Assembly: GCA_907165135.1 (NCBI GenBank)
Contig: OU015566.1
Coordinates: 1,674,001 to 1,738,000, forward strand
Direction: 5' to 3'
Source of the DNA: Oikopleura dioica
Taxonomy: Eukaryota; Animalia; Chordata
DNA: 64,000 bases
Shown in pieces: positions 26,378 to 43,368 of the stretch. Every line of letters starts with the position of its first letter. Within the stretch, counting starts at the first letter, position 1. Position numbers and translations under genes: made by a program. Under the pieces are notes generated by a model. The model was not told the DNA's origin. It saw only the letters and a list, made by a program, of their open reading frames with translations, and searched no databases.

Positions 26378-29300
26378 TTACCATTCGAGTGTGTTTTGCT
26401 TGAAGACTCTGTCGAAGAGAATGTCGAATTGGAATTGAATTCGGCATTTGAAAGTCGCTTTCTTGTTTGCATTGGTGCAGGTTTCTCCCGTCGCATCTGT
26501 CGCGTCCAAAGGATCGTTGCCATAACCTGAGCTTGGGCAATTCCAGAGAAGAAGCTGCTGCCAGTGATTGTAGAGATAGACTAGTTCTCGAAGAGCATCG
26601 TAGTCTCCGATGTCTTCGGCGGATTGAGTCTGGAAATCAGCATAGAGAGATTCGTGAGCTAGTTAATATAAAATTAGAGTACTTTAACATTTCTATAATA
26701 CCTCCAATGAAGTCGCTATGGATGCTTCTGCCTCTCTTTCCGCACCCCGATTTCGCCTTATTGATCGCCTTCTTCTCCATGTTATCAAAAAATCGTTCGA
26801 AAGCAGCGAGCCGTTTATCATTAATTGTCGAAAGAGTTCCAGTAGAGTGGATGTGAGTCAATCGAGCTTGGATTTCAACCATAAGCCTATCGCCAGCATC
26901 ATTTTTGACGTTATTCCAGCTTGTGCATCCTTTTTCGGTCATTGTGTAGCCAGATTTACATTCACAAAGGCCGGATCCAGAATTGTATTCAGCAAACCAA
27001 TCTGTACAATCTGCATTGGTAAGAGAAGCATCGTTGCACTTTTCAGAAAACTTGAATCTGAAGCAATCTCGGCTCCACCATGGTGCGCTTGTAGATCCTT
27101 TATCTTCCCGTGCACAGCTGTTTACTTTGCGATGACGCCAGCCTCCAGTGCAGCTACCCCAGCTATCGTCCCACCAAGTGAGAACATTTTCACTCGCTGG
27201 TCGGCAATCTCCAACAACTGTCATCTAAAAAAAATTTGTATTGTAAAGAAAAAAGACAATCATACGTAGAAACCGGAATCACAGGTGCAGGAATTCGACG
27301 AACTATCATAAGTCATGTTATCGCCGCATGCACATGACAAACCATCAGATGAGATTTCCACACCATGAATATCGAAACAAACGCAGCTTGTGCCGTCGTA
27401 AGAAGATTGACCAGAGCATGGACTTGTGGTTGTTGTCGCTTCCGAGGTTGTAGTGGTAGTTGTAGTCGTTGTAGTAGAAGTGGTGGTCGTTGTAGTGGTA
27501 GTCGTAGTGGTAGTTGTTGTGGTCGTTGTCGTTGTTGTCGTGGTAGTTGAAGTCGTTGTTGTAGTAGTGGTGGTCGTTGTAGTGGTAGTCGTAGCGGTGG
27601 TTGTTGTTGAGGTAGTCGTAGTTGTTGTCGTTGTCGTAGATGTGGTTGTTGTTGTCGTTGTTGTTGTCGTTGTCGTAGTCGTTGTCGAAGTCTTCAACGA
27701 GAGATTATCTTTTATTCTTTGATAAATCATTTTTTACATTATATTGCTTTTTGATGATATAATTTATTAAAAAAATGTTTGGTTTATCGAAACGGGAAAA
27801 ATCAAGGAGCCCTTGTAGCAAAAGCGGACAAATGTAAATCTTTAAACTATTTTTGCAAGAGTTTTAAATGCCTTGAATTTCCATTTTGTGGAATAAATAT
27901 TTTATTTCTCGATCCGCTAAGAACAGGTGGTCAAATACTTGTATCAGGTCGAAATTTCAATAAAAAGAGTTCAAGCTTATATTCAACCTGATAATCATTA
28001 CTGGATAAAAGTGTTTGTAAGGAGTTTAATTGCTGGATGTTATCTATACAGAATAATTTACGAGCAACACAATTAATTTAATTTTTCCTTTTGAATTTGG
28101 TTTTAAAATAAAAAGGTAAAAATCGATTTTCACAGACTTCAAGATCAATTCTTATATTGTTCTTAAAATTCTATACTTCGTATTTTCGCAGGGCTAATAG
28201 TTTGATCCTTCGACAATGTCCAAGTGCGCTCCGATTTTTACTGATTAATCCTTTTATCCCCCTTACAGGCGCAAAAGAGCAGGTGTTTTGAAAACATTAC
28301 CTGATCTTATCGATATGGGTGAAAAGAGAATTTTTCCAGCTTTCAGAAAATATATAGTTTGACATATTATTTATATCATATATAAAATCGGAAATTGAAA
28401 AATGACCTTTCTAACAGTGCAATTCTACTGAGCGCTAGTGCATAAGCGCACCCATAGAAAGTTGCGTATCTCGTGATCAAGATGAGATACTTCAGATCCG
28501 AAAAAAGATATGGAATCCGCATAAGCTAAATAAAAAGAAATGATTTGGTCGACTCTTAAGACAGACCGTTATCCGATCGTTGTTAACACCCTTAACATAA
28601 CCCAGGGGGCTAAACCCCCCGGGACCCTCACCAGGGCTGCACAATTGGCAAAAAAAATTGGATTTTTCCAACCAACTGCCAATCCAATCCAACCCAAATT
28701 TTGCCAATCCAACCAAATTCCAATCCAATGCCAATTCCAATTGGAATTTGGATGTCCAATTGGCAATTGGAATCAAACTTCCAATTGGCACTAGTTTTCC
28801 AATAGGACAGCCGAATTACAATTGAATCGGATTTTATTGGTAAATTCAGTTTTTATGAGTTCACTTGGCATAAATTACAGACAAAACGGACAATTCCGGA
28901 AGTTTTTTTTTCGGGGAAAAGCGCCAAATCTCCGGAATTGTCCGAATTCTAATTGAAAATTTTTTGCTTCCAAAGTGCCTTTTTAAGGGTGTCAACCAGA
29001 AAATGGGCTTTTTTAGTGCTACTCATGGCTTTTTTGACCCTTCTCTCATTTCTTTTCTGAAAATTCTTCGTAATATTTCGCGAAAAGGTGGTCCTATATA
29101 CAAAATAGACCTCTCAGTTGAATTTTTTGTCTGAAATTTCCGGAATTGTGCGTTTACAAAAATTTTACCGATTTCCCTCAAATCTCCGGAATTGCCCGTT
29201 CCGGAATTGTCCGTTTTGTCTGTATATCATATACAGTTGTGTGAGGAGTTTCCGCACCCATAAAGTGTGGGTAAAGGGTGCGGTAGCGCAGCACTCACTT

Positions 29301-32300
29301 TTGCTACTTCTAGAAGAAAATAGTAGAAAAAGTGCGGCCTAGGGGTGCGGGAACGCAGCACTCAAAAAGGGTGCGGAAACTCCTCACACCACTGTAATCC
29401 TTTAACCTTAGCCCGCCAGGGTACACCATCTATGGAACAGGGGTCAAAGAATTAGGTCTCTCACCGAAGTGATATTCAGTTTCAAAAAACGGAAGAAACT
29501 AGGGCTATTTATCGACAGACTAAGGGCTATTTATCAACATAGTTGGAAAAAACACACGCAAAACACGCAAGCACTCGCACGCGGGATTTACGAATACTCG
29601 CACGCGGCCCGCGTGACGCGGGTTTTGAAAATCTGCGCACACGCACGCACGCTCACTTGGATTTTGAAAAATTCGCGCACGCGCACGCGGTTTTCGGGTG
29701 TTCTTTCCAACTACAGTGACAACCCATTTTAAGGCCGACCCTTTTAAGGCCACTTTTTCGGAAAATCCCAAAAATCTGTCATCCTCGAAAAATCCATTTT
29801 AAGGCCACTTTCTTTCAATTTCTATTCAATATCTGCAAGTTGCAGTGTCAATTGAAAAAACTTATATAATTCGACTGCGGGATGTCTTGTGTTTTATCCA
29901 GAGTTGGTAAAAAATGAAACTTTTTATTTCTCTTTTTTGGTACTCTTCGGTGATTTTGTCTCGAATTTTTTTATTGATGATGATTTCTTACGGTCCTCTT
30001 AGAATTTTTACTTAGATTTTGAGTCCAAGAGTTCAAATCTATCATTATATAGGCGTGCTTAGACACGCAGACGAATTTATAGACCATTTTTCTATCGAAA
30101 AAGCTCAGTTATTGGGGTGTAGGGCGGCTACGTAACAAGTAGTCAAAATTGTAACGGCGTTACAAAAATTCAAAATCAAAATCATTGAACGAGTGTGCGC
30201 TTCGCGCTTGAATTGAAGGAAACTACTTTTTGGTATACCTTATTGCTTATTCTGTTCGAAATAAAAAGAATTGAGGGATGTAAAATAATATTTATTGCGA
30301 AAAAAATCTGAGTTTTTGTAACGGCGTTACAAATTGTAACGTAGCCGCCCGTCCCCCAGTTATTGTCTTCTTCAGGTCACTATTCTTTGACGTCTTCGCT
30401 AGAATCTCTTCATATCTTTTTTTCGCATTTGTCAAGTTGATTTTTTTAAGACGTGTTTTTCGAATATTATTTTTGAAATAATGAAAGAAAGAATCACCTT
30501 GAGTTCAATTCAAAGAACACATTTGGAAAAAGTCCGTGATTTATACTTTTTTCGAGCGAAAGAAATATGCGATAACCCTGTTACCCTCATTCATCATTTT
30601 TTATCCCAAGAAAGGAAAAAAATTGTTGTCATCCGACTCGAGACAAAAAATATTCAATTTAAGGCCACTTTTGAAACTCGCTGTCATCCGAAAATCGGCC
30701 TTAAAATGGGTTTTCACTGTATGTTTATCGATAAGCTATCCTAAGGTTACCTTTGGACTACTCTCGGTTTGGGTTAGGGTTTGGAAATAGGCTTATTTGG
30801 AGAATTACTGCATGCACCATGTATGGTGCAAATGCAATTGCTACAACGGCGCAATTGCTACAACGGCGCGGACCATCTGAAGGTGTTTTTGACCGGTAAG
30901 CAATATTTTTCCGAAAACTTCGCCGAATAACCTCCCCCTTCGAACTGGAGAGCTTGAACTGATGCTGAAACCTAAACCAGAATCCTCAACCTAACCCAAA
31001 CTCAAACATAAATCAAAATACGAGCCCAAAGACGAACGTAATAGGAGGAATCTCAGCCCCGTTCCTTGATCCTTTAAATTAAAGGGGCCGATCGGCTATC
31101 GGAAATTCGGTTTCCGATGTGGAAGGAGGTGGCTCGATCCAATCATTTTGCGAATTTACCAATTGGCGACCAGTTGCCAATTAGACCCCCATTTTCCAAT
31201 TGGAATTGCCATCCAATTGGACAGACCCTGATTTTCTCCCCCTTTTTCCAACCAATTTACCAATCCAATCCAATTGGAATTGGAAACCAATTGGATTCCA
31301 ATCCAATTGTGCAGCCCTGCCTTAACCAGAGGGCTTTGCCCCCCTTACCCCCGTTGAAAGTTTAAAGTTCCTAACCCTTGCTTCTTGCCCAGATTCAAGA
31401 GATATTGGATGGCTCGAATCATAGGCTTGAATGATAACTCCTCTCTTCGAAGGAAACATCGTTAACCGATCCCGAGTTTCTAAGAAATATCTTCATATCA
31501 TCTTTTTCGTCAAGTTCTTTTTGATGCTGATATTGCTGCATCTTTTCGCGTGTTCGTTGATTGAAATTATGCATTGCAAAATTTATCTTTATTCCTTACA
31601 TAGACTTTCTGAAAATAAAAAGCCTAAAAATAACACCGAATCACCGACCGAGACCTTTTGAAACCCATTTAAAATCCGACAGACCATTTGCAAAAAAATG
31701 TGTGAGAGAAAAAATAATAGAAAAATAAAGACTCTTGAACATGTGATGTTTACACCTTTCGTATCGCTCTAAATTGTGAAAAGAAAAAGCAATTTTTACC
31801 GTTGTAGTCGTAGTCGTTGTAGTTGAAGTTGTTGTTGTGGTTGTTGTTGTCGTGGTCTTAAAATTGGGTTATCGCATTGAAAGACAAAGAAAACTATATC
31901 GTTGTTGATAAAATTGCTTTTAACAAATACCATTGTCGTAGTCGTAGTTGTAGTCGTTGTCGTAGTCGTTGTCGTAGTCGTTGTAGTTGTAGTTGTTGTT
32001 GTGGTTGTTCTTGTCGTGGTCTTAAAATTGTGTTATCACATTTAAAGACAAAGAAAACTTTGTCGTCGTTAATAAAATTGCTTTTAACAAATACCGTTGT
32101 CGTAGTCGTAGTTGTTGTTGTTGTCGTAGTGGTTGTTGTAGTGATTGTTGTTGTAGTTGTTGTTGTGGTTGTTGTTGTCGTGGTCTTAAAATTGTGTTAT
32201 CGCATTGAAAGACAAAGAAAACTATGTCGTTGTTAATAAAATTGCTTTTAACAAATACCGTTGTCGTAGTCGTAGTTGTAGTTGTTGTCGTAGTCGTTGT

Positions 32301-35300
32301 TGTTGTTGTAGTTGTTGTTGTCGTTGTGGTTGTGCTTGTCGTCGTTGTCTGAATATTTGATAGATCGATTGATTGATATTTTTAGTGTTTTTCTGCTTTC
32401 TAGCGCCAACATGAGGCTGATATTTCTAGTTCGGTTATAATATTCTATTTTAGTGCGTTCTTAGCTTTCGATAGACCTCTTATATGTCTTATTTCGCTGA
32501 CATTGAAAAATCGAAAAAATTCGGTTTTCGCGTAATTTCAATATACAAATTACAATTAACATGCATTTTTGAAATTTTTGAAGGCTTAAATTTTGAGACA
32601 AGATGTTCGTTAAGGGGTCATATGTACATCATAATGATCCTCAGAATACGAGTAATCTAAAAATATCAAATAAAGACTCTTATCAAGTACAAAAAAACAA
32701 GGGGGATCCCTTAATCGTCGAAAAAAAATAAGTTTTCCGAGATTTTTTGGTAAAGAGATGCTCTCACTCCGACCCTTATTTTTGAAAAATATTTCAAAAA
32801 ATTTTTTTGTCTTCGCCGGTGGAATCTTTCAACCCTTCTTTGTACAACGGATAATTCGAATTTTGTAAACGGTATACCGAATCAGGTTTTCCCGCCTTAA
32901 TTGTTAAGAAAAGCCCCGATATTGACGACCTCCCCCTTAAGACTTACCGTTGTTGTAGTTGTCGTGGTTGTAGTTGACGTGGTTGTAGTTGTCGTTGTAG
33001 ATGTGGTGGTTGTTGTGGTTGTAGTGGTCGTCGTTGTTGTGGTTGTAGTTGTGGTCGTTGATGTCGTAGTCGTTGTGGTGGTTGTGGTGGTCGTCGTTGT
33101 TGTAGTGGTGGTCGTTGTTGTCGTTGTAGTGGTGGTCGTTGTTGTTGTAGTCGTGGTTGTTGTTGCGGAAGTTGTTGTCGTCGTTGTCGTAGTTGTAGTC
33201 GTTGTCGTGGTTGTGGTGGTGGTTGTTGTAGTAGTGGTGGTGGTTGTAGTGGTGGTGGTTGTAGTGGTTGTCGTTGTTGTTGTCGTTGTAGTTGTTGTTG
33301 TTGTTGTAGTTGTTGTTGTCGTAGTCGTCGTTGTGGTCGTCGTCGTGGTTGTAGTCGTTGTAGTAGTTGTTGTAGTAGTGGTTGTCGTTGATGTCGTTGT
33401 TGTCGTTGTTGTGGTCTTAAAGTTACTATGAGAATCAACATGCAAAAATTGTAGTCCAAACTTCCGTAAATTATAGTTTCATATCCGAGTGGGTCTGGAT
33501 TTTCCGCGGAAATATTATTCTAGCTCTACGCTTTGAGAAGAGCAAACTTTGAGCCAAAGTCGAGAGAATTGAAGAGCAAAAATATTTTTGAAAAAACTTT
33601 TTAGGGCCATATCTAAGGATTTTTATATTTTTTCAAATAGATATAAATAGTCAATTTGGTCAAGAATTCTTTTTTTTATTCCCGTTTACTCAAATTGAAT
33701 ATGCGACAAAATCTATCAGAGTGTCTTTATTTTTCTGCAATCACTTTGAGCGAGTCTAGAAAGGAAAAATAGAGAAAGCGCGGGCAAAGGGGCCACCAAA
33801 GCTGCAATCGCAAAGGGGCAAACAACTGCGCAACCCACTGTATCATAAAAAATCTTTGAGTCACGAAAAATGAACTCAAAAACCTCTTGAAGAGACGAAG
33901 CTAGGTTTTGAGCAAAAAGCCATAGTATTTATCCTTTTAATGTTCATGACTTGGCTAAGAAATAAGTGAAGACGATTAAAATGATGGTCTTAAAGGTCTT
34001 TTACCTTTCCTTTCAAAATTATCATTCTTAGCGTATCCGCAAAAAACACTTCAAGAGGTTCTTAGAGCTAATAATATATATTAACTGAAATATATTTTAT
34101 AATAAGCATTATAAAAGGACATTTAATATATCATATTAAAGCATATTTTTCAAGAGAAGCTATGTGATGTGGAAATAAATTTCTTATAACTGGGAAAGAC
34201 ATTATCTTTTTCGGCGAGAAAATACTTGGCCCCGTCGATAACACCTTAGGATGTGCATGCAATTATTCTCAACCTTATGAAAGTACCTTACTCTACAAAT
34301 TCGTAGACTAACTTTTTAAATTTAAATTTTATAGATTTTAACACGGAACTTGGAAATGAGCGCTCCCTCGAAAAACGACATAAGCAAGAGCGCAGCGTGA
34401 GAAAAAGGCGGCCGCGGAGTGAGAGCGCTCATTTCAAAGCTCCGTCTAAAATCTATAAAATTTAAATTTAAAAAATTAGTCTACGAATTTGTAGAGTAGA
34501 CGGAGCTCTACAAAATGGTTCTTATTTGGGAAAAATCGGACGAAAATTGTGGGAGGAGATAGACTTTGAGCAAATCATCCCATTTTTTCATATTTCTACG
34601 CTTACGATTCTTTTCAGAATTGTCTTAATGAAAGTGAAGGCCTTTATGATCTTAACACAAAAAGAATTATGAAAAATACTCAGATTTGACGGACCTCTGA
34701 AAAATATGTCACGGCGGGGCGCTGAACGGGCAGCTGCGCCGCGCCGATTTCATGTTTAACCCTTAACCTAAGTTGCTAGCACGTGTTGTTTTTGAGATAT
34801 GAGCTCTTGAAATCTTGTCGAAAATAATTTTTTGTTTTAATTTTCATCATCAACCTAAAATATTGACGAGGAAATAATAGATATTTATAAAAGAAAATAT
34901 TTAAAATTCCAATTTTTGAAGCCGATTTTCGTCAAAATTTATTATATCAATAGAAAAATTTTTTGACTAAAACTTTCACCTTGTAATCTTATCTACCTAA
35001 AATGGTAAAGGATACTTAAAGAGTAACGAAATTCATATTTATCGCGGGTTCTTAAACTTAATTATTACAAATTTTTCTTGGAAACTCAGAGTAGCCATAA
35101 GCTATGAAAATTTTTAAGAAACTAAGATGAAAGAGCATAAATAGACTATATAAAATAGTTTAGTAAGTATACAAAAAATAACGATGATCGAAAAAAATAA
35201 GCCAGCTGAAGAGTGAGAATGATAAAGAGCGAGAAGCGCGCGCAGAGCTCGGTCGGTTGGGTCCCTTAACCCGTTAACTGGGCGTGCGATATTTTACGTT

Positions 35301-38300
35301 AACAGACGCGTGGAGATCTTATCTCCACGGACGTTTTGACGATTTCTGTAGAGTATGGCCAATCTTAGTAAATTCTAAGAAAACAGGGTGATTCAGAAGC
35401 GTCTGCTCTTGCATCTGACCATTGTTTTTTTGTTTCTCTTGGTCGTCTTATGACTGAAAATTGGGTTCAAAGTAACGTCAGTTTCGGCGCTGACAACCAT
35501 TGAAAAGGGAAAAAAAGAGAAAAGGCGAGCGTGTTGCATTACTCTTTCCCTTTTTTTCGCTGAATGAAGTTTTTCTTTTGCTTCTCTTGAGAAGAATTTC
35601 ACGCAGAATATTTTGAAAATTATACTAGCGGATAGAGAATCGATTAAATTTTTCAAAAATGCAAAAATTTTCAAAAAAATTGAGTCTGGTCCATGTTAGA
35701 GCGCTTCATAGGCGCCGTGGAGATTAGATCTCCACGCGACTGTTAACGGGTTAACTACAGAGAAGAATAAAAATTTTTTGCTGCAAGCCTTGCCTCACTT
35801 TTCTATTCAAACCAGGGCTATCGGTTTCTAGTTGATTCAAATAATCCGCAATATTTTCTCCGCGTAACACGCAAGTTTTCATGCTTTACAATTTTTAACC
35901 GAAGGGACCCGGAATTAAATGCCTTTTAACGAGCTCCTTACTCTTCTAGAAGCATTTTATACAAGTGCTGCGTCTTCGCACCTTTTATAAGTTAACAAAA
36001 GTGCTAAAAATTTTCAAAGAACTAGAAATGATTGAGTGAAAATTTCTTTTCAATGGACAATGAATCATTCGTATTTTACCGTAGTTGTCGTTGTTGTCGT
36101 AGTTGTTGTTGTCGTAGTAGTGGTTGTAGTGGTAGTTGTGGTTGAAGTTGTTGTCGTTGTTGTTGTCGTCGTTGTGGTTGTTGTCGTAGTTGTTGTTGTT
36201 GTAGTGGTGGAGGTTGTTGTGGTTGTTGTTGTCGTCGTCGTCGTGGTCGTTGTCTTAAAATCATCATGATAAATATTCAATACTTTTATTCGAGTGTTTT
36301 AGATAAGACTCGTTTATATTTTGATTGACAAGGGACAAAATAAATCCAAAGTATCGTGAAAGTGTAAAATTTCTTGGATCATTTTAATTTTCTTCCCATC
36401 GGATTCAGCGTATTTGAAAACCCCGGAAAAAATGGTACTTTTTCTCTTCCGCTGTGAAAACGCGATAAGCGCGGCATTTCAAAGGCCGAAAGTATCCAAC
36501 TTTGTTCCAATTGATTTACAGAGAACTAATACTGACAATAAAAATCTAATTTATCAGACTTTTAGATAAGGGTCTGAACTACTTAGCAAACTTTTAAAAA
36601 CTAAAAATATTAATCCTAACCCAGTCATTCAGTCATTCAAAATGTCCCCATTTTACAAAAGCGCGCGCGGCTCTTCCTTCCTCCCTCTCACCTGTAAAAA
36701 TGACCCTATATTACTGAAAATTTGGCCACAGACTAAATTTTTTGTTCCTTATTCAATCGTAAAAAAATTATCCTCAGAAAATAAGGTATTGCTCTGTTTT
36801 TTGGCGAGAGAAGACCTCAAGTTCAAACCTACATAAGTACTCAAAATAATATGTTTATCCGTCTGTAACTTGATTCATCGAAAAGCGCATTCTTTACTCG
36901 ATTAAAATAATCTTTAAAAATCTCATGGAAGCATTTCTTTATTTGATTATCGAAGGAAAAATGCTTGCCTCCTAGTGCGCCTGACCTACTTCACGAGCAC
37001 ATGATTCCCGCTGAGATATTTGCAAGTGCACTAACGACCAGCGCGATTGTGCTTCCAGATATAATTCTGAGCAAATACCAATGAAAGCATTTTTGTAGAG
37101 TAAAGAGCGGTCTTTTCGATGAATCTAGTACCAGACGGATAAACATATTATTTTGAGTACTTATGTAGGTTTAAACTTGAGAGTCTTCTCTCGCCAAAAA
37201 AAAGAGCAATACCTTGTTTTCTGAGGATAATTTTTTAACGATTGAATAAGGAACAAAAAGTTTAGTCTGTGGCTAAATTTTCAGTAATATGGGGTCATTT
37301 TTACAGGTGAGAGGGAGGAAGGAAGAGCCGCGCGCTTTTGTAAAAATTTGGACATTTTGAATGACTGAATGACTGGATTAGGATTAATATTTTTAGATTT
37401 TAAAAATTTGCTAAGTAGTTCAGACCCTTATCTAAAAGTCTATTAAATAAGATTTACATTGTCAGTATTAGTTCTCTGTAAATCAATTGGAACAAAGTTG
37501 GATACTTTTGGCCTTTGAAATGCCGCGCTTATCGCGTTTTCACACCAAAAGAAAAAGTACCATTTTTTCAGGGGTTTTCAAATACGCTGAATCCGATGAG
37601 AAGAAAATTAAAATGATCCAATAATTTTACACTTTCACGTTAATTTGAATTTATTTTCTTGAAGATTATGCAAACCAAACCCTTTTTACCCGTTACCAAG
37701 CGAATGGCGTAAATAAGCCTTTCTCTCCAACAATTATGCCGTATTTCGAGTCTCCGAGCATGTCTTAGCATCGAAACTGCTACGCTCTTGGCAACGGAGG
37801 AAAAATTTTATCTTATATGATTTTATGATTCTTGTTTTATTAGCAAAAAATTAATACCGAGTTTTTCAGACTCTAAACCCGAGAAGCGCTGCCACTTAGG
37901 CTTTCCAGAGCTTTGATTGGCTGACCAGCAAATTTGATTTTCAAAAGTCGACATATACGTCTGACAACTTTTGATTTTCTCGGGGCAAACGCTTGAAATT
38001 CTCGGTATCAAACATGGAAAATTAAAATATATTTCTTTAAAAACTTTCATTTTTTATAAATTTTTTATTTTATTACCGTTGTTGTCGTCGTCGTCGTTGT
38101 TGTTGTTGTTGTTGTTGTCGTAGACGTCGTTGTCGTAGTTGTCTAAAATTTTTCTTAAAAACTTGGTCGTATATAGAGTACAAGGATTTCATGTTAAAAG
38201 TGCGATGCGAGCGAACTTGAGCCATCAAGTAACGTTTTTGTTCGCGTACTCAGCAGAAAAAAATTTCTTTCTTGACAAGCTCGCTGACTGAAAAATATCA

Positions 38301-40484
38301 AAGGGTCTTTTCTTATGGTCTGTGCTTTTTCTAGCTTTTTGAATGAAAAAATCGGTCTATTCTTCACACATTTTTATTTTTGCAAATGGTCTGGTTGGTC
38401 GGTCTCGGATATCCCCCGGGTTTATTAGATACCAGGTCGGTCTCTCACTGATAGGAAAAGGTTTTTCATGAGCTCATAATGACAATTTTTATCCTGCTGT
38501 CATTTCATTTGATTCCCATGATATGCAGGGCGGGTCTTCCTCTCGGAAAACCATTGTCATAGATGTGATCTGAAAAATTAAAAGAAGCAAAATTGTAAGC
38601 AATCACCGTCGTGGTTGTAGTTGTTGTCGTGCTTGTAGTTGTGGTTGTCTAAAAATAATTGTATGCATGTGATTTATTAAATTATAATGAACGAGAATTC
38701 TATTTGCACCAATTCTATCAACTCTGCTCTCATACCGTAGTAGTTGTTGAAGTTGTCGTTGTTGTCGTAGTTGTGGTTGATGTAGTAGACGTGGTCGTCG
38801 TTGTTGTAGTAGACGTGGTCGTCGTTGTTGTAGTAGTCGTAGTCGTCGTTGTTGTAGTAGACGTGGTCGTCGTTGTTGTGGTAGTCGTGGTCGTCGTTGT
38901 TGTAGTAGACGTGGTCGTCGTTGTTGTAGTAGACGTGGTCGTCGTTGTTGTAGTAGACGTGGTCGTCGTTGTTGTAGTAGACGTGGTCGTCGTTGTTGTA
39001 GTAGTCGTAGTCGTCGTTGTTGTAGTAGACGTGGTCGTCGTTGTTGTAGTAGACGTGGTCGTCGTTGTTGTAGTAGTCGTGGTCGTCGTTGTTGTAGTAG
39101 ACGTGGTCGTCGTTGTTGTAGTAGACGTGGTCGTCGTTGTTGTAGTAGTCGTAGTCGTCGTTGTTGTTGTAGACGTGGTCGTCGTTGTTGTAGTAGTCGT
39201 GGTCGTCGTTGTTGTAGTAGTCGTGGTCGTCGTTGTTGTAGTAGTCGTGGTCGTCGTTGTTGTAGTAGACGTGGTCGTCGTTGTTGTAGTAGACGTGGTC
39301 GTCGTTGTTGTAGTAGTCGTGGTCGTCGTTGTTGTAGTAGACGTGGTCGTCGTTGTTGTAGTAGTCGTAGTCGTCGTTGTTGTAGTGGTCGTGGTCGTCG
39401 TTGTTGTTGTGGTTGTTGTGGTTACTTCCGCACAGCCACTTCCATTATCGACATATCCATCTGGACAAACACAAAGACTTGTGTCAGTATCATCAAGAAT
39501 AGCGCCGCTTGTGCACGTGCATTCTCCATTGTTCTCTGTTGCACCTGGTCCTGAGCATGCAATACAAGGCGCCACTGCGACGGTCGCACTATTCGTGTTG
39601 TCAAAATATCCAGGAGCGCAGACACAATCGTACGATCCATCAGTGTTCTCACAAGTTTGAGAAGTGAGACATGTGTTGAGACTTGAGTCTGAGCATTCAT
39701 CGAGATCTTCGCAAGTGAGACCACCATCAGCCATGGCAACTTTATCGTCGACATCAACAGAATCCCAGTAGCCAGTGTCGCACTGACAGTAAGCAGTAGG
39801 AAGACCACTGTTATCTTCTGTCACGCAAGTTTGGTTACCACCACAGGTATCCTCCAGGCAGGGAAAGGAGGGGTTGCAGACTTTGTCTGTTGCAGTGTTG
39901 GCGAAAGTGGTGTCTGAGCTTTCAGTGTAACTACCTCCCGATTCATCGTAGAGTTCGTAGTTATTGCTGCAAACGCACATGGCTTCTGATTCAGAAATAG
40001 CCGCACATTCAGAATTCGCGATTGAAGAGCAGTCATATGAGTTGCAAGGGTCGATTCGCTGACAACCAACTCCGTTTTGACCGATGATGCCAGTTGAATT
40101 TGTGCTCTCGTAGTTGTCAACGCAGACGCAGCTAGCTTCTGTCTCACCAAGTCCAGGGAGCTGACAGTAGGAGTAGAGGGGGCATTCGCCGTAGGTTTGC
40201 TCCAAAACATCACAAGCTATAAGAAAATGTTACAATTTTGCTACTTGATGATCAATCTTCAACTTACGAGTTTGGACTTCGCAAACAGTTGTGAAAGACC
40301 CTCCGTTGACTTCAACCGCTGTATCGTAGGTGACGGCAACGTAGTCAAGATTAGAAGCACATGCGCATTTTCCAGACAGTTGACATAACGCCATGTATGG
40401 ATAGCAATCTGTGTTAGCAGTACAGTCGAGGTCCAAGACACTCTGAGCTGTCACCAGCGGCACACTCGTCAGCGCGAGCAGCGC
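26378..40484 (-). CDS. Giant secreted mucin-like protein: EGF/cbEGF array, ~680-aa poly-Thr, EGF/TSP1-like, C-terminal helical domain
   Basis: Exons 40484-40268, 40216-38736, 38648-38607, 38142-38077, 36253-36080, 33415-32948, 32348-32259, 32184-32095, 32020-31931, 31856-31800, 27691-27266, 27224-~26703 and ~26659-26378 splice in frame with GT-AG. cbEGF DLDECSDSSLNTC..CENTDGSYDCVC; TSP1-like WWDDSWGSCTGGWRHR. The start-codon exon upstream of 40484 was not found. Confidence 0.85.
28878..29222. mobile_element. TA-flanked MITE (Tc1/mariner-type ends)
   Basis: TA|CAGACAAAACGGACAATTCCGGA ... TCCGGAATTGTCCGTTTTGTCTG|TA, with internal TCCGGAATT repeats. Confidence 0.9.
29234..29394. mobile_element. 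TA-flanked MITE (161 bp)
   Basis: TA|CAGTTGTGTGAGGAGTTTCCGCACCC ... GGGTGCGGAAACTCCTCACACCACTG|TA. Confidence 0.9.
29540..29713. mobile_element. Small TIR element with GCAC/GCGCAC repeats
   Basis: TAGTTGGAAAAAACAC ... GTGTTCTTTCCAACTA; no clear TSD. Confidence 0.6.
29714..30719. mobile_element. TA-flanked ~1-kb MITE (CAGTG ends)
   Basis: TA|CAGTGACAACCCATTTTAAGGCCGA ... TCGGCCTTAAAATGGGTTTTCACTG|TA, with subterminal TTTAAGGCCACTTT repeats. Confidence 0.88.
30114..30356. mobile_element. GGGG..CCCC MITE with perfect 8-bp TSD
   Basis: CAGTTATT|GGGGTGTAGGGCGGCTACGTAACAA ... TTGTAACGTAGCCGCCCGTCCCC|CAGTTATT. Confidence 0.9.
31800..32348 (-). repeat. Tandem triplication of a 164-bp intron+poly-Thr exon unit
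   Basis: Near-identical 74-nt introns at 31857-31930, 32021-32094 and 32185-32258; three 90-nt exons. Confidence 0.92.
34291..34496. mobile_element. TA-flanked MITE with ~75-bp TIRs
   Basis: TA|CTCTACAAATTCGTAGACTAACTTTTTAAATTTAAATTTTATAGA..GAAATGAGCGCTC, mirrored at 34425-34496|TA. Confidence 0.9.
35270..35750. mobile_element. piggyBac-like MITE
   Basis: TTAA|CCCGTTAAC ... GTTAACGGG|TTAA, with subterminal palindrome CGTGGAGAT..ATCTCCACG at both ends. Confidence 0.85.
36338..37655. mobile_element. Foldback element: ~560-bp inverted arms, ~200-bp spacer
   Basis: 36338-36900 is the reverse complement of 37098-37655 with scattered mismatches (e.g. GGCTCTTCCTTCCTCCCTCTCACCTGTAAAAATGAC vs GTCATTTTTACAGGTGAGAGGGAGGAAGGAAGAGCC). 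Confidence 0.92.
38736..39423 (-). repeat. Coding 24-nt tandem repeat (S/T)TTTTTTT
   Basis: Plus strand GTGGTCGTCGTTGTTGTAGTAG(A/T)C reiterated, giving 8-aa periodicity in the translation. Confidence 0.9.
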
Positions 40485-43368
40485 CTAAAATATTTTTATA
40501 ATCCAATTCATTTTATCGCGATTCACACCGAATTAAACTATTCTATCATTATTTGATGTGCGAGTTTTATTTTAACAATCATGAGAAAACATACTAATGA
40601 TAATCATAAAATGGAGCGCGGAAATCAGACTCAATCCACAGATTTTGATCGAACGATATATTTTATCCTATGATTCAAAGTCTGTAGGACTTTTAAAAAG
40701 ACCAAGAGTAGAGCCAAAATTGATAAATATGCAGATAAGTTAATGTTATAGCCGAATCAATAAACTTATAAAAATGTATTTATGACCGGGTCATTAATAA
40801 GTCCGCAGGTCATAATTTCTTCATACATGTTTTCGTCTTTGGCTTTAAAATAACCAAGATGAAGTTGATCTATTGACTTGTTTCGATTCTCTATTCTTTT
40901 AGAGAGAATCGTGTCATAAATTGACTTCAATTATATTTGATCCTGAATTTCGTCAAAGGATAAAACTTCTATGTTTTTGGATCAAGCATAGATTATACCC
41001 TTGACAACAAAGGTGAATTTAACATTTTTCAGGGGGATAAAAATCACTTGAATCAAGGCCGGACATTTTCGAAGTCAAGTTATTCCATAGATATCGACTT
41101 TGAAATCAAGGAAGAGTCATTTTCGAGAAAAAATAAAAAGATATGTTGTACTAGTTGTTAACCTGTATATATCTTATCATTTTGTGAATCCTTCTTCTGT
41201 TTTATTTAAAAAAAAATTGGCACCGTCTCTGGAATGTATCTTGTTGCCTCTCTGAGTTCTAGGACTGAAACAAAGCAGCCAACTTTCAGAGAGAAAAAAA
41301 GATGACAGGAGCAAAAAAGCAGCAAGAGCCGGAACAATGGACTGAGCGTAACTTGCTTTACACTATCTATTTTACTTTTTTTCTTGAGGCGCCACCTTGC
41401 ACCGAGAATGATCGACGTCACGGGCACATTTTTTGTCGCTCGTAACGGCTCCGTGCTGATGATCATAATCAGCTTCGCGCTTCTTTTTTCAAGTCCGGTA
41501 GTGACGCTTGTCATAAAATTTAAAATTCTTAATTAAAGACCCGGACTAGCGCCTTTTTGACGATTCCGCATTTTCTCATAGTCAACATGTCTTGACTCAA
41601 GACTCGTTTGGTTCAAAAATGATGATAAATGGGGATCTTTACCCTTTTTTTGATAACAGGCTATTCCACACTGTCAGGAATAGAATCTAAGTTTTTCTGA
41701 TACTGTAGTTTGAATTTGTATTTGAAAAAAAGATTAGCAAGCTTTTAAAAAAGGGGGCAGAAATGACGAGTTTGGCGAGTTCGGCTCTTAGACTGAAAAT
41801 TCAACATTCATAAAAGGTTTAGCCTTTCTAGGCCATCGAATTCAACGAAGGTAGATATAGTCATCGTTTCGATTAGTAAAATGCCCTTATTCGGCATTTA
41901 TACCGCTTCTTTATACCAGAATCCGCAACAAAACTCCCGAATGATTCGCGCGATCCCGAAAGGTTCGGAAATCCCGAAAGATTTGGGATCCCGAAAGGTT
42001 GAAGTGAAAACCTCCTTATTCATAGATACATCTTAGGTAAGACTCATCGGGTTTCCGCCGTCAACCGACCCATATCCCTAGACACTCATCTGCTTGAGAC
42101 TCATTCTCCCTGGTCTGTGAGGGACAAATTGATGGCTTCAATAAAGTGGACATTTTTGTTAAAGATTGATTTAATCTATCAGCTATGAAAGGTCAATTTT
42201 AAAAGCATATTTTGTTAATGGTATCACCTTCAAATGAAAATTAAATTACTTATTTATCAGATGTTAAGAAATTTTATGGTGCTTAAGTCGATTATTTAGA
42301 AGGAGAATAACGAGGAATTTTTGCATCAAATGTCTTTATGATCAATGATCTAGGAAATCCGGAAGGCCGAAGTTAAGATCTTGAGCTTTAATGACAATTG
42401 AAAAGAAAAAACGCTCCAATTTTCTAGAAAATCGTTTTCTTTGGCGTGACAGTCAGTTATTCAATTTCGCTCCCCGTCTAAAACGTCAGGAGCCACATAA
42501 ATGTGAATTGCACAATTACCAAATAGCTATAGTTATTGCCGGAAAACTATTTCGCGAGTCAGGTTAACCACACCGGATCTGACCATGTTTAAAAGCCTTC
42601 AGCAGATGATGATGATGATGACCAGGATCATAAATAAACAGCTCGTTATTATTTTCTCACCGGATGAACGAGCCAAGGCAATAATTACCCTTGTGAATTA
42701 TCTTGTCAGCATTTTTAATGAGGCTCCGGTTGATCGACGCTTTTCGAGGTTTTTTTAACGGTGTCCATGAGCTTAGAGCGTGATGCAAATTCTGTGATTT
42801 ATAACAGCCCAGAACTGGATTTTTCGGAGCCCTTCTTTGGAAGAAAATATAACAAAGGAGCGCCCTTATTTTATTTCACCGAAATAAAGTTTTCAGGTGT
42901 ATCTTGTTTCCCAAAAGTTAAAAAGGGGAAAGTTGCATGGTTCATCTAGCAGATTCGATCCCATCAGATTTGAGTTTTCGGTTCGAAAATTGAAGACCAA
43001 AAAGGTTTTAAAAATCATCTTCATGTTGACCGATGAAAAAAAAATTTTCAGGACCTTGGAGACTATTTTTAGGCAGACTTATTATGAGCCTATTTTAACA
43101 ACCCAGGGACTTGATCAATAAATTATTTTGCTAAGTTTATGAACTCTCCAGATGTTACATCGCTTATAAAAACAGCCTTATAATTTATAAGTTATAAACC
43201 ACTGATGAACTTCTTGTTTTGAAAAATCTTGAGTTTTTTTTCTAGTTACGTCCTATTTTTGACCTCTGTGTCCAAAGTGCAATGAGTCAAAAATTTATTC
43301 ATCAAATATTTACGCCCGATCAAAGAGTAAATATCTGGACAAAAATTCGCTCATTTTTGCAGAGAAAA

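What the first reader, a model, noticed from the sequence alone, without database searches (positions are those of the whole stretch)
27266..40216. Mucin built from symmetric phase-0 poly-Thr cassette exons: possible tunable-length glycan spacer
Eight internal exons of 42, 66, 174, 468, 90, 90, 90 and 57 nt are all multiples of 3, start with ACN and end ACG (one ATG) before GT. They encode almost pure Thr and lie between two larger Thr-containing exons, for about 680 Thr-rich residues in total by manual count. Any subset can be skipped without frameshift, so the distance between the N-terminal EGF array and the C-terminal EGF/TSP1-like/helical module could be tuned by splicing. Inference: a structural house (oikosin-like) or filter-mesh glycoprotein with length isoforms.
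Basis: partly seen in the sequence, partly recalled or inferred. Interest (0 to 1): 0.75.

Follow-up and report, generated by a model that had tools for sequence, protein, structure and literature searches.

The report
Oikopleura mucin spacer split into exons
A secreted Oikopleura dioica protein has a roughly 670-residue, almost pure threonine stalk that is cut into ten in-frame exons, unlike any other poly-threonine tract found in this genome, but nothing yet shows that the animal varies the stalk length by splicing.

Summary
On the minus strand, eight AG/GT-bounded, phase 0-0 exons of 42, 66, 174, 468, 90, 90, 90 and 57 nt encode nearly pure Thr. They lie between two larger Thr-containing exons, giving about 670 Thr/Ser-rich residues.

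The window is O. dioica OKI2018_I69 chr1. The public annotation (g380, CAG5102605.1) covers only the last 284 residues and starts at an internal Met.

Paralogues, a Tara transcript and metatranscriptome contigs of a close relative (probably the orthologue) show one gene: signal peptide, Cys-rich/EGF part, mucin spacer, then an unassigned C-terminal module.

The family has four genes in this genome. Two have no spacer, one has about 190 residues in a single exon, and this one has about 670 in ten exons. The nine spacer introns are therefore most likely young gains, and three arose by tandem duplication of a 164-bp exon-plus-intron unit.

In ACN-coded sequence, only a phase-0 donor (ACG|GT) puts the preferred G before GT. 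The symmetry is therefore expected and is not evidence of design for exon skipping.

Splice isoforms and house (oikosin) status could not be tested. The TSP1 label is not supported. This is an unusual variant of a known kind, of moderate interest.

The parts
40999..41025 (-). Tentative first coding exon (Met + 8 residues, donor GTATAA). Joined to the next exon it gives a plausible signal peptide.
   Evidence: the only nearby ATG...GT candidate in phase 0. Paralogues begin with a similar signal peptide (P0064, P0097). Not verified by RNA.
40268..40484 (-). Exon encoding the rest of the signal peptide and an N-terminal Cys-rich module. It ends in phase 1, followed by a 51-nt GT-AG intron.
   Evidence: It aligns with the N-terminus of P0064. 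No Pfam match.
38736..40216 (-). Large exon: EGF-like array (one EGF_CA above Pfam's threshold), a CSGP...CxC module, then 229 Thr/Ser residues. Ends ACG|GTATGA in phase 0.
   Evidence: 45-48% identical to P0064 and P0063. The Thr part is a 24-nt repeat of 26.3 copies at 95% matches (38776-39407).
38607..38648 (-). Poly-Thr mini-exon, 42 nt, TAG|ACA...ACG|GTGA
38077..38142 (-). Poly-Thr mini-exon, 66 nt, TAG|ACA...ACG|GTAA
36080..36253 (-). Poly-Thr exon, 174 nt, AAG|ACA...ACG|GTAA
32948..33415 (-). Poly-Thr exon, 468 nt, AAG|ACC...ACG|GTAA
32259..32348 (-). Poly-Thr exon, 90 nt, CAG|ACA...ACG|GTAT; first copy of the tandem unit
32095..32184 (-). Poly-Thr exon, 90 nt, AAG|ACC...ACG|GTAT; second copy
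31931..32020 (-). Poly-Thr exon, 90 nt, AAG|ACC...ATG|GTAT; third copy
31800..31856 (-). Poly-Thr exon, 57 nt, AAG|ACC...ACG|GTAA; truncated fourth copy
31807..32342 (-). Tandem array of a 164-bp unit (90-nt exon + 74-nt intron), 3.3 copies at 90% matches
   Evidence: Introns are 90.5-96% identical. The 74-nt intron occurs nowhere else in the genome.
27266..27691 (-). Last Thr exon: 87 Thr-rich residues, then a second CSG...CxC Cys module. AAG|ACT acceptor; ends TAC|GTATGA in phase 0. The start codon of the public g380 model lies inside it.
26702..27224 (-). Exon encoding the beta-rich part and the first helices of the conserved C-terminal module. Preceded by a 41-nt intron; ends in phase 1.
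   Evidence: AF2 model of P0045 has pLDDT 89.
26378..26658 (-). Last coding exon (C-terminal helices and Cys motif) with stop TAA at 26378-26380. Preceded by a 43-nt GT-AG intron.
   Evidence: Confirmed by the annotated protein P0045 and the spliced transcript L005.
36337..37657 (.). About 1.3-kb foldback element (long inverted arms, 88-94% complementary) inside spacer intron 3
32368..32715 (.). About 340-bp dispersed repeat (at least 41 genomic copies) inside spacer intron 5

Best explanation
This is one minus-strand gene of Oikopleura dioica (OKI2018_I69 chr1) with about 14 coding exons and about 1343 codons. It encodes a secreted glycoprotein: a signal peptide, an N-terminal Cys-rich module, an EGF-like array with one calcium-binding EGF, a roughly 670-residue spacer that is about 94% Thr, a small Cys module, and a conserved unassigned C-terminal module (beta-rich part plus helix bundle). 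By inference, the spacer is densely O-glycosylated and forms an extended mucin-type rod that holds the two ends apart. The gene belongs to a four-member family in this genome. Two members have no spacer, and one has about 190 residues at the same site inside a single exon. The spacer therefore arose inside an exon and, in this gene, was later broken up by nine introns and lengthened by a 24-nt VNTR and by tandem duplication of a 164-bp exon-plus-intron unit. The uniform pattern AG|ACN...ACG|GT in phase 0 follows from codon structure and splice-site preference: phase 0 is the only phase at which a Thr codon puts G before the donor GT. The exons are therefore automatically symmetric and skippable. 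Whether they are skipped is open. The default expectation is mostly constitutive inclusion, with length set mainly at the DNA level.
For: Exons and boundaries; the total model is in frame at 4029 nt.
Organism and locus: P0045 = CAG5102605.1, 'OKI2018_I69.chr1.g380', lies on a 14,533,022-bp contig, which is the length of C4. The assembly is 64.3 Mb in 19 scaffolds (PMC8008620).
One gene, four lines of evidence:
- P0064 (CBY34348.1/CBY11563.1, 640 aa) carries the N-terminal module, EGF array and C-terminal module contiguously, without a mucin.
- P0009, a Tara transcript, has an EGF_CA array fused to the C-terminal module.
- The paralogue at C4:3.288 Mb has the EGF array, about 190 Thr/Ser residues and the Cys module in one 458-codon open frame.
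- The spliced metatranscriptome contig L005 reads from poly-Thr into the C-terminal module in one 430-codon frame.
Splicing of a phase-0 Thr-region intron (TCG|GTA...AAG|ACA) is seen directly by comparing genomic L008 with transcripts L005 and L006.
Mucin-less paralogues have no intron at the spacer site (L015, L017).
Uniqueness: 7 of 12 genomic (ACN)7-GTRW sites are in this gene, and other poly-Thr loci examined are single exons.
Duplication and VNTR.
The small introns are not mobile. The large ones are inflated by repeats.
Against: No RNA of the Okinawan lineage was seen, so inclusion of each mini-exon and the join across the 4.1-kb intron are inferred.
The public annotation treats the 3' part as a separate gene (g380).
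The first coding exon is tentative.
The young duplicated exons show no cleaner purifying selection than their introns: first and second codon positions vary at 4/60 sites against 7/74 in the introns.
Tiny exons flanked by long introns, in a genome whose median intron is 49 bp, could well be skipped at some rate.
O-glycosylation and secretion are inferred, not shown.
Confidence: 0.7

Rival explanations
1. One reading: the eight symmetric poly-Thr exons are true cassette exons. Regulated skipping makes a ladder of spacer lengths in steps of 14 to 156 residues, tuning the distance between the EGF part and the C-terminal module by stage or cell type.
For: All exons are phase 0-0, so every subset is in frame.
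Four exons (42, 66, 174 and 468 nt) sit between introns of 87-2664 nt, in a genome whose median intron is 49 bp.
Six of nine spacer introns use an AAG acceptor, against 2 of 11 in non-spacer introns of the family.
The 74-nt introns are better conserved than the synonymous sites of the exons they flank.
Against: No isoform evidence of any kind was obtained.
The symmetry is forced by ACN codons plus the preference for G at donor position -1, so it carries no information.
The AAG excess is not significant once the three duplicated introns are counted once, and AAG acceptors also occur in ordinary introns of the family.
The 74-nt introns have a pyrimidine tract and a branch-point-like TAAC, so they look efficiently spliced.
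Short-intron genomes generally favour intron definition, under which exon skipping is uncommon (general knowledge).
Length variation is already provided by paralogues and the VNTR.
Confidence: 0.2
2. Two genes, as in the public annotation: an upstream EGF-plus-poly-Thr gene, and a separate 284-residue protein (g380) starting at the internal Met.
For: CAG5102605.1 (g380) and the Norwegian CBY07143.1 are both annotated as proteins of about 281-284 aa starting at that Met.
Against: A 284-aa Cys-rich extracellular module would have no signal peptide.
In the close relative's transcripts, the reading frame stays open upstream of the equivalent Met through more than 100 Thr codons (L005, L006).
The paralogue has everything in one exon.
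P0064, P0097 and P0009 join both halves in one protein.
Short-read assemblies and gene predictors typically break at low-complexity repeats.
Confidence: 0.05
3. Some or all of the mini-exons are decaying relics or pseudo-exons. They are no longer included, and the mature mRNA joins the big exon more or less directly to the last Thr exon.
For: The young duplicated exons show no excess constraint at first and second codon positions relative to the introns. The long, repeat-laden introns suggest relaxed architecture.
Against: All 16 splice dinucleotides are intact, and there is no stop or frameshift in 1077 nt.
The AC periodicity ends exactly at the splice sites.
The four duplicated copies all keep AG and GT despite 10-18% divergence.
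Confidence: 0.05

Closest known systems
Its own O. dioica family: CBY11563.1/CBY34348.1 (E4XNX5, 640 aa, Bergen), OKI2018_I69.PAR.g10565 (605 aa), the paralogue at chr1:3.288 Mb (Bergen CBY07143.1 is its probable counterpart, inferred from a short sequence match seen by eye), and a fourth copy at C1:0.62 Mb
   Same: Same order of parts: signal peptide, N-terminal Cys module, EGF-like array with one EGF_CA, CSGP/CxC module, conserved C-terminal module. The N-terminal half is 45% identical and the C-terminal module aligns throughout.
   Different: Two members have no mucin spacer, and one has about 190 residues in a single exon. Only this gene has about 670 residues spread over ten exons. All are unnamed or uncharacterised, and two public models are truncated at an internal Met.
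Classical mucins (e.g. MUC1, MUC2, MUC5AC): PTS/VNTR domains
   Same: A long Thr/Ser-rich tandem-repeat domain with a young VNTR (24-nt unit, 95% matches). It is presumably O-glycosylated and extended.
   Different: In those genes the PTS domain typically lies in one large exon (general knowledge); here it is cut by nine introns. There are no VWD, CysD, SEA or cystine-knot domains (Pfam). The tract is almost pure Thr, with no Pro.
CD45 (PTPRC) exons 4-6 (A, B, C)
   Same: In-frame cassette exons that encode O-glycosylated, mucin-like segments, whose inclusion changes the length and glycan load of an extracellular stalk (general knowledge).
   Different: The protein is unrelated. It has three exons and proven, regulated isoforms. 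Here there are eight exons and no RNA evidence.
Titin PEVK, collagen and elastin-type arrays of short symmetric exons
   Same: A low-complexity spacer built from many in-frame exons that multiplied by exon-intron duplication. In titin, differential inclusion tunes length (general knowledge).
   Different: Different composition and cellular location. In those cases splicing is documented.
Oikosins (house proteins; Hosp et al. 2012, PMC3390340)
   Same: Secreted, glycosylated, fast-evolving larvacean proteins. Oikosins 25, 28 and 32 carry EGF/EGF_CA domains and oikosin 1 has mucin-like sequence.
   Different: No member of the 90% clusters around this gene or its paralogues carries an oikosin name. 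No proteomic or in situ evidence was available here.

Membership tests
Mucin-type (PTS-domain) secreted glycoprotein | Long Ser/Thr-rich, tandemly repetitive domain | tested here: met
   670 residues, about 94% Thr and most of the rest Ser. 24-nt VNTR of 26 copies.
Mucin-type (PTS-domain) secreted glycoprotein | Entry into the secretory pathway (signal peptide) | tested here: inconclusive
   A hydrophobic leader ending ...VTAQS is encoded at 40440-40484. The Met exon is only a candidate. Paralogues have clear signal peptides.
Mucin-type (PTS-domain) secreted glycoprotein | Dense O-glycosylation of the domain | not testable with these tools
   Needs biochemistry or glycoproteomics.
Alternatively spliced cassette-exon array | Exons symmetric (same phase on both sides, length a multiple of 3) | tested here: met
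   All eight are phase 0-0. This is expected anyway from ACN codons plus G at donor position -1.
Alternatively spliced cassette-exon array | Transcripts with and without the exons | not testable with these tools
The only transcripts reached (L005, L006, from another lineage) cover just the last ~105 Thr codons.
Oikosin (house structural protein) | Detected in the house proteome, or expressed in the oikoplastic epithelium | not testable with these tools
   No expression or proteome data were reachable. The 2026 single-cell preprint has no matching text terms.
Oikosin (house structural protein) | Sequence identity with a named oikosin | tested here: not met
   No oikosin name among cluster members or hits. 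The searches were limited by length windows, so this is weak negative evidence.
EGF_CA-containing extracellular protein | Pfam EGF_CA above the gathering score | tested here: met
   PF07645, 38 bits against a cutoff of 27, E 1.9e-9. The same domain is found in P0064.
   No TSP_1 hit; the only related model scores E 0.73 on another segment. Foldseek finds no TSR with either the whole module or the beta part alone. A WxxW...RxR-like motif is visible by eye only.

The most novel reading that the evidence does not exclude
The nine introns turned a single-exon mucin stalk into a splice-adjustable ruler. Regulated skipping of the poly-Thr exons would then give a ladder of stalk lengths, from roughly 300 to 670 residues. 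Together with the 0- and 190-residue paralogues, this would set defined spacings in an extracellular structure such as the house filters. It would be a case where intron gain inside a low-complexity exon created new regulatory capacity.
Probability: 0.12. Interest if true: 0.75.

Novelty: new variant of a known kind. Interest (0 to 1): 0.42.

Why it matters
It corrects a split and truncated public gene model, and it defines a small larvacean protein family with an unassigned C-terminal module that is confidently modelled.

It also offers a clean natural series of spacer lengths, roughly 0, 0, 190 and 670 residues, inserted at one site in otherwise similar proteins.

For intron evolution, it is a compact example of several young, lineage-specific introns inside a homopolymeric coding tract. 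Three arose by exon-intron tandem duplication, in a genome known for rapid intron turnover. It also shows why such introns must all be phase 0.

The splicing idea can be tested directly with existing O. dioica RNA data.

Tried and rejected
- All searches were made exon by exon or with database proteins.
- **Other poly-Thr loci:** other loci hit by the 164-bp unit turned out to be single long exons, and the apparent matches through the intron were spurious.
- **First pattern search:** a YAG acceptor pattern missed the gene's own AAG acceptors and was redone.
- **Mobile-intron idea rejected:** the 74-, 87- and 464-nt introns are unique in the genome, and no terminal inverted repeats sit at intron borders.
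- **Weak AAG acceptors as a mark of cassette exons:** not sustained, because AAG also occurs in ordinary introns of the family.
- **Synonymous versus non-synonymous test on the duplicated exons:** confounded, because third positions vary five times more than the adjacent introns.
- **L005 versus L008 differences in the Thr tract:** these look like VNTR or allelic variation, not splice isoforms.
- **Fold and family of the C-terminal module:** Pfam, Foldseek, VIA-align and the ESM Atlas gave nothing beyond a generic helix bundle at Z of 7 or less.
- **Literature:** searches for splicing or mucin data on this gene found nothing.
- **Oikosin primers:** the in situ primers in Hosp et al. Table S3 were not matched against the contigs, to avoid typing sequences.
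Full report
**What is there**

The window has about 39% GC. It is G000:C4:1674001-1738000 of a 64.28-Mb, 19-contig assembly. A database protein identical to the 3' exons is CAG5102605.1, 'Oidioi.mRNA.OKI2018_I69.chr1.g380.t1'. It lies on a contig of 14,533,022 bp, which is exactly the length of C4. The published OKI2018_I69 assembly of Okinawan Oikopleura dioica is 64.3 Mb in 19 scaffolds, with a median intron of 49 bp (PMC8008620). Earlier scan notes had named this organism, and this check confirms it.

**The observation**

All runs of Thr codons (ACN) in the window lie on the minus strand between 27446 and 39422.

| Exon (window coordinates) | Length (nt) |
|---|---|
| 38607-38648 | 42 |
| 38077-38142 | 66 |
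| 36080-36253 | 174 |
| 32948-33415 | 468 |
| 32259-32348 | 90 |
| 32095-32184 | 90 |
| 31931-32020 | 90 |
| 31800-31856 | 57 |

- Each exon is preceded by AG, begins with ACN, ends ACG (31931-32020 ends ATG) and is followed by GT. None has a stop, and all are phase 0-0.
- The flanking exons 38736-40216 and 27266-27691 end and begin in phase 0 and add 229 and 87 Thr-rich residues.
- The spacer totals 670 residues, about 94% Thr and almost all the rest Ser.
- Genome-wide, seven Thr codons followed by GT[AG][AT] occur only 12 times, and 7 of those are in this gene. The mirror acceptor pattern occurs 14 times, 4 of them here.
- Other poly-Thr loci that I examined are single long exons.

The architecture is therefore real, far beyond chance, and apparently unique in this genome.

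**Gene model**

- Downstream of the last Thr exon, a 41-nt intron leads to exon 26702-27224. A 43-nt GT-AG phase-1 intron then leads to the last exon, 26381-26658, with stop TAA at 26378-26380.
- The annotated protein P0045 reads exactly across these junctions.
- Upstream, exon 40268-40484 encodes the hydrophobic end of a signal peptide and a Cys-rich module. It joins exon 38736-40216 through a 51-nt phase-1 intron, and the junction matches paralogue P0064.
- A Met exon at 40999-41025 is only a candidate.
- The 14 exons sum to 4029 nt, or 1343 codons, in frame.
Every search used single exons by reference or database proteins.

**One gene, not two**

The public model g380 starts at an internal Met of the last Thr exon and has no signal peptide. 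Four results show that the two halves belong together.

1. P0064 (CBY34348.1/CBY11563.1, Bergen O. dioica, 640 aa) is 45% identical to the EGF exon. It continues without any mucin into the same Cys module and C-terminal module. Its Okinawan counterpart is g10565.
2. P0009, a Tara Oceans transcript, has an EGF_CA array fused to the module.
3. A paralogue at C4:3.288 Mb has the EGF array, about 190 Thr/Ser residues and the Cys module in one 458-codon open frame.
4. Metatranscriptome contig L005 comes from a close relative (probably the orthologue; 65-77% identical). It reads from more than 100 Thr codons into the whole C-terminal module in one 430-codon frame.

Genomic contig L008 of that lineage has an intron inside the Thr region (TCG|GTA...AAG|ACA, phase 0). 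This intron is precisely removed in L005 and L006. That is direct RNA evidence for this kind of intron, though not for the Okinawan exons.

**How the architecture arose**

The genome holds four family members: two without a spacer (L015 = g10565, and L017), one with about 190 residues in a single exon, and this one.

- The spacer sits at the same site in both mucin-bearing genes, and the mucin-less genes have no intron there. The simplest history is an in-exon expansion followed, in this gene, by nine intron gains.
- L008 has an intron where this gene has none. Its adjacent Thr exon is at least 154 codons long, where this gene has 87 Thr-rich residues and then a 4.1-kb intron. Positions therefore differ between lineages.
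- Three introns come from tandem duplication of a 164-bp unit of a 90-nt exon plus a 74-nt intron: 3.3 copies, with introns 90.5-96% identical.
- The big exon holds a 24-nt VNTR of 26 copies at 95% matches.
- The 74-, 87- and 464-nt introns are unique in the genome, so they are not mobile introns.
- The long introns are swollen by repeats: a 1.3-kb foldback in intron 3, palindromic elements in intron 4, a 340-bp dispersed repeat with at least 41 copies in intron 5, and nested inverted repeats in intron 9.

**Why all the introns are phase 0**

Within (ACN)n there is no GT. A donor needs G at position -1 to fit the usual consensus. Only the third base of a Thr codon can supply that G (ACG|GT); phases 1 and 2 would put A or C there. 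This explains both the ACG ending and the uniform phase. Exons bounded by same-phase introns are automatically multiples of three. This step is inference from codon structure and the general splice-site consensus.

**Splicing isoforms**

Indirect signs are weak:

- AAG acceptors are frequent in the spacer introns (6 of 9). They also occur in ordinary introns of the family (2 of 11), and the excess fades when the duplicates are collapsed.
- The 74-nt introns have a pyrimidine tract and a TAAC branch-like site.
- Third codon positions of the duplicated exons vary at 15 of 30 sites, against 7 of 74 intron sites (P = 1.6e-5). First and second positions vary at 4 of 60 sites. This points to codon shuffling by slippage or conversion, or to intron constraint. 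It prevents a clean selection test.

I rate regulated length isoforms at about 0.2. Some low-level skipping is quite possible.

**What the protein is**

- Pfam finds one EGF_CA above threshold.
- The C-terminal 265-residue module has no Pfam family.
- A profile search of 1.84 billion representatives finds only 43 relatives. They are from O. dioica and from marine metagenomes and metatranscriptomes.
- AlphaFold gives a confident model (pLDDT 89, pTM 0.86) of a beta-rich part plus a helix bundle.
- Foldseek finds nothing, and VIA-align finds only generic helix bundles at Z of 7 or less. The beta part alone also finds no thrombospondin repeat.
- The 'TSP1-like' label is therefore not supported.

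**Oikosin status**

Oikosin status is defined by house proteomics and expression (PMC3390340). No cluster member or hit carries an oikosin name. The length limits of the searches make this weak negative evidence.

**Function, by inference**

The protein is most likely secreted, with its two structured ends held apart by a stiff O-glycosylated rod. The usual figure for mucin domains is about 0.25 nm per residue (general knowledge). That gives roughly 170 nm for this gene, against about 50 nm and 0 nm for the paralogues.

**Verdict**

This is a new variant of a known kind: a mucin-type spacer protein with an unusual multi-exon spacer, in an uncharacterised larvacean family. Interest is moderate.

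Noticed in passing
window 26378-27691 (minus); P0045 = CAG5102605.1; P0048 = CBY07143.1: The public models of this gene (OKI2018_I69 g380, 284 aa) and of its paralogue in the Bergen genome (281 aa) both start at an internal Met just after the poly-Thr tract. They are truncated or split gene models.
   Followed up: yes
P0045 residues 18-284 (window 26381-27224, minus): The conserved C-terminal module of about 265 residues has no Pfam family and no convincing PDB fold match, despite a confident AlphaFold model (pLDDT 89). Only 43 relatives turned up among 1.84 billion representatives, all from O. dioica or marine samples.
   Followed up: partly
window 31857-32348 (minus): Among the three duplicated 164-bp units, third codon positions of the exons vary five times more often than the adjacent introns (15/30 against 7/74). 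This is unexplained; it could be repeat shuffling or intron constraint.
   Followed up: partly
L019 1-3527 = L020 818-4344 (G000:C4:3231500-3235026 and 3286317-3289843): A 3.5-kb stretch holding the 5' half of the paralogue (signal peptide, EGF array, mucin, Cys module) is present twice, 54.8 kb apart, at 100% identity. It is either a very recent segmental duplication or an assembly artefact.
   Followed up: partly
window 36337-37657: About 1.3-kb foldback element with long inverted arms (88-94% complementary) inside intron 3.
   Followed up: partly
window 32368-32715: About 340-bp dispersed repeat with at least 41 copies (72-88% identical) across all large contigs. Here it sits 20-30 nt from the acceptor of intron 5.
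   Followed up: partly
window 34289-34498 and 35297-35748: Two small palindromic or TIR-bounded elements in intron 4: 52-nt arms at 98% complementarity, and 34-nt arms at 94%.
   Followed up: no
G000:C5:6598282-6605080: The same poly-Thr-plus-GTGA string recurs four times at a spacing of about 2,260 bp. It looks like a tandem array of a Thr-rich unit or gene, unrelated to this locus.
   Followed up: no
L015 1192-1507 (G000:C1:7693187-7693502): The annotated g10565 protein (P0097) jumps 315 nt at the point where its relatives encode the W-rich beta part of the C-terminal module. An exon may be missing from that public model.
   Followed up: no
L007 (Ga0206687_1341646): A third transcript type, 83% identical to P0002, goes from poly-Thr almost directly into the C-terminal module and lacks most of the small Cys module. 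It is probably another lineage or paralogue rather than an isoform.
   Followed up: no
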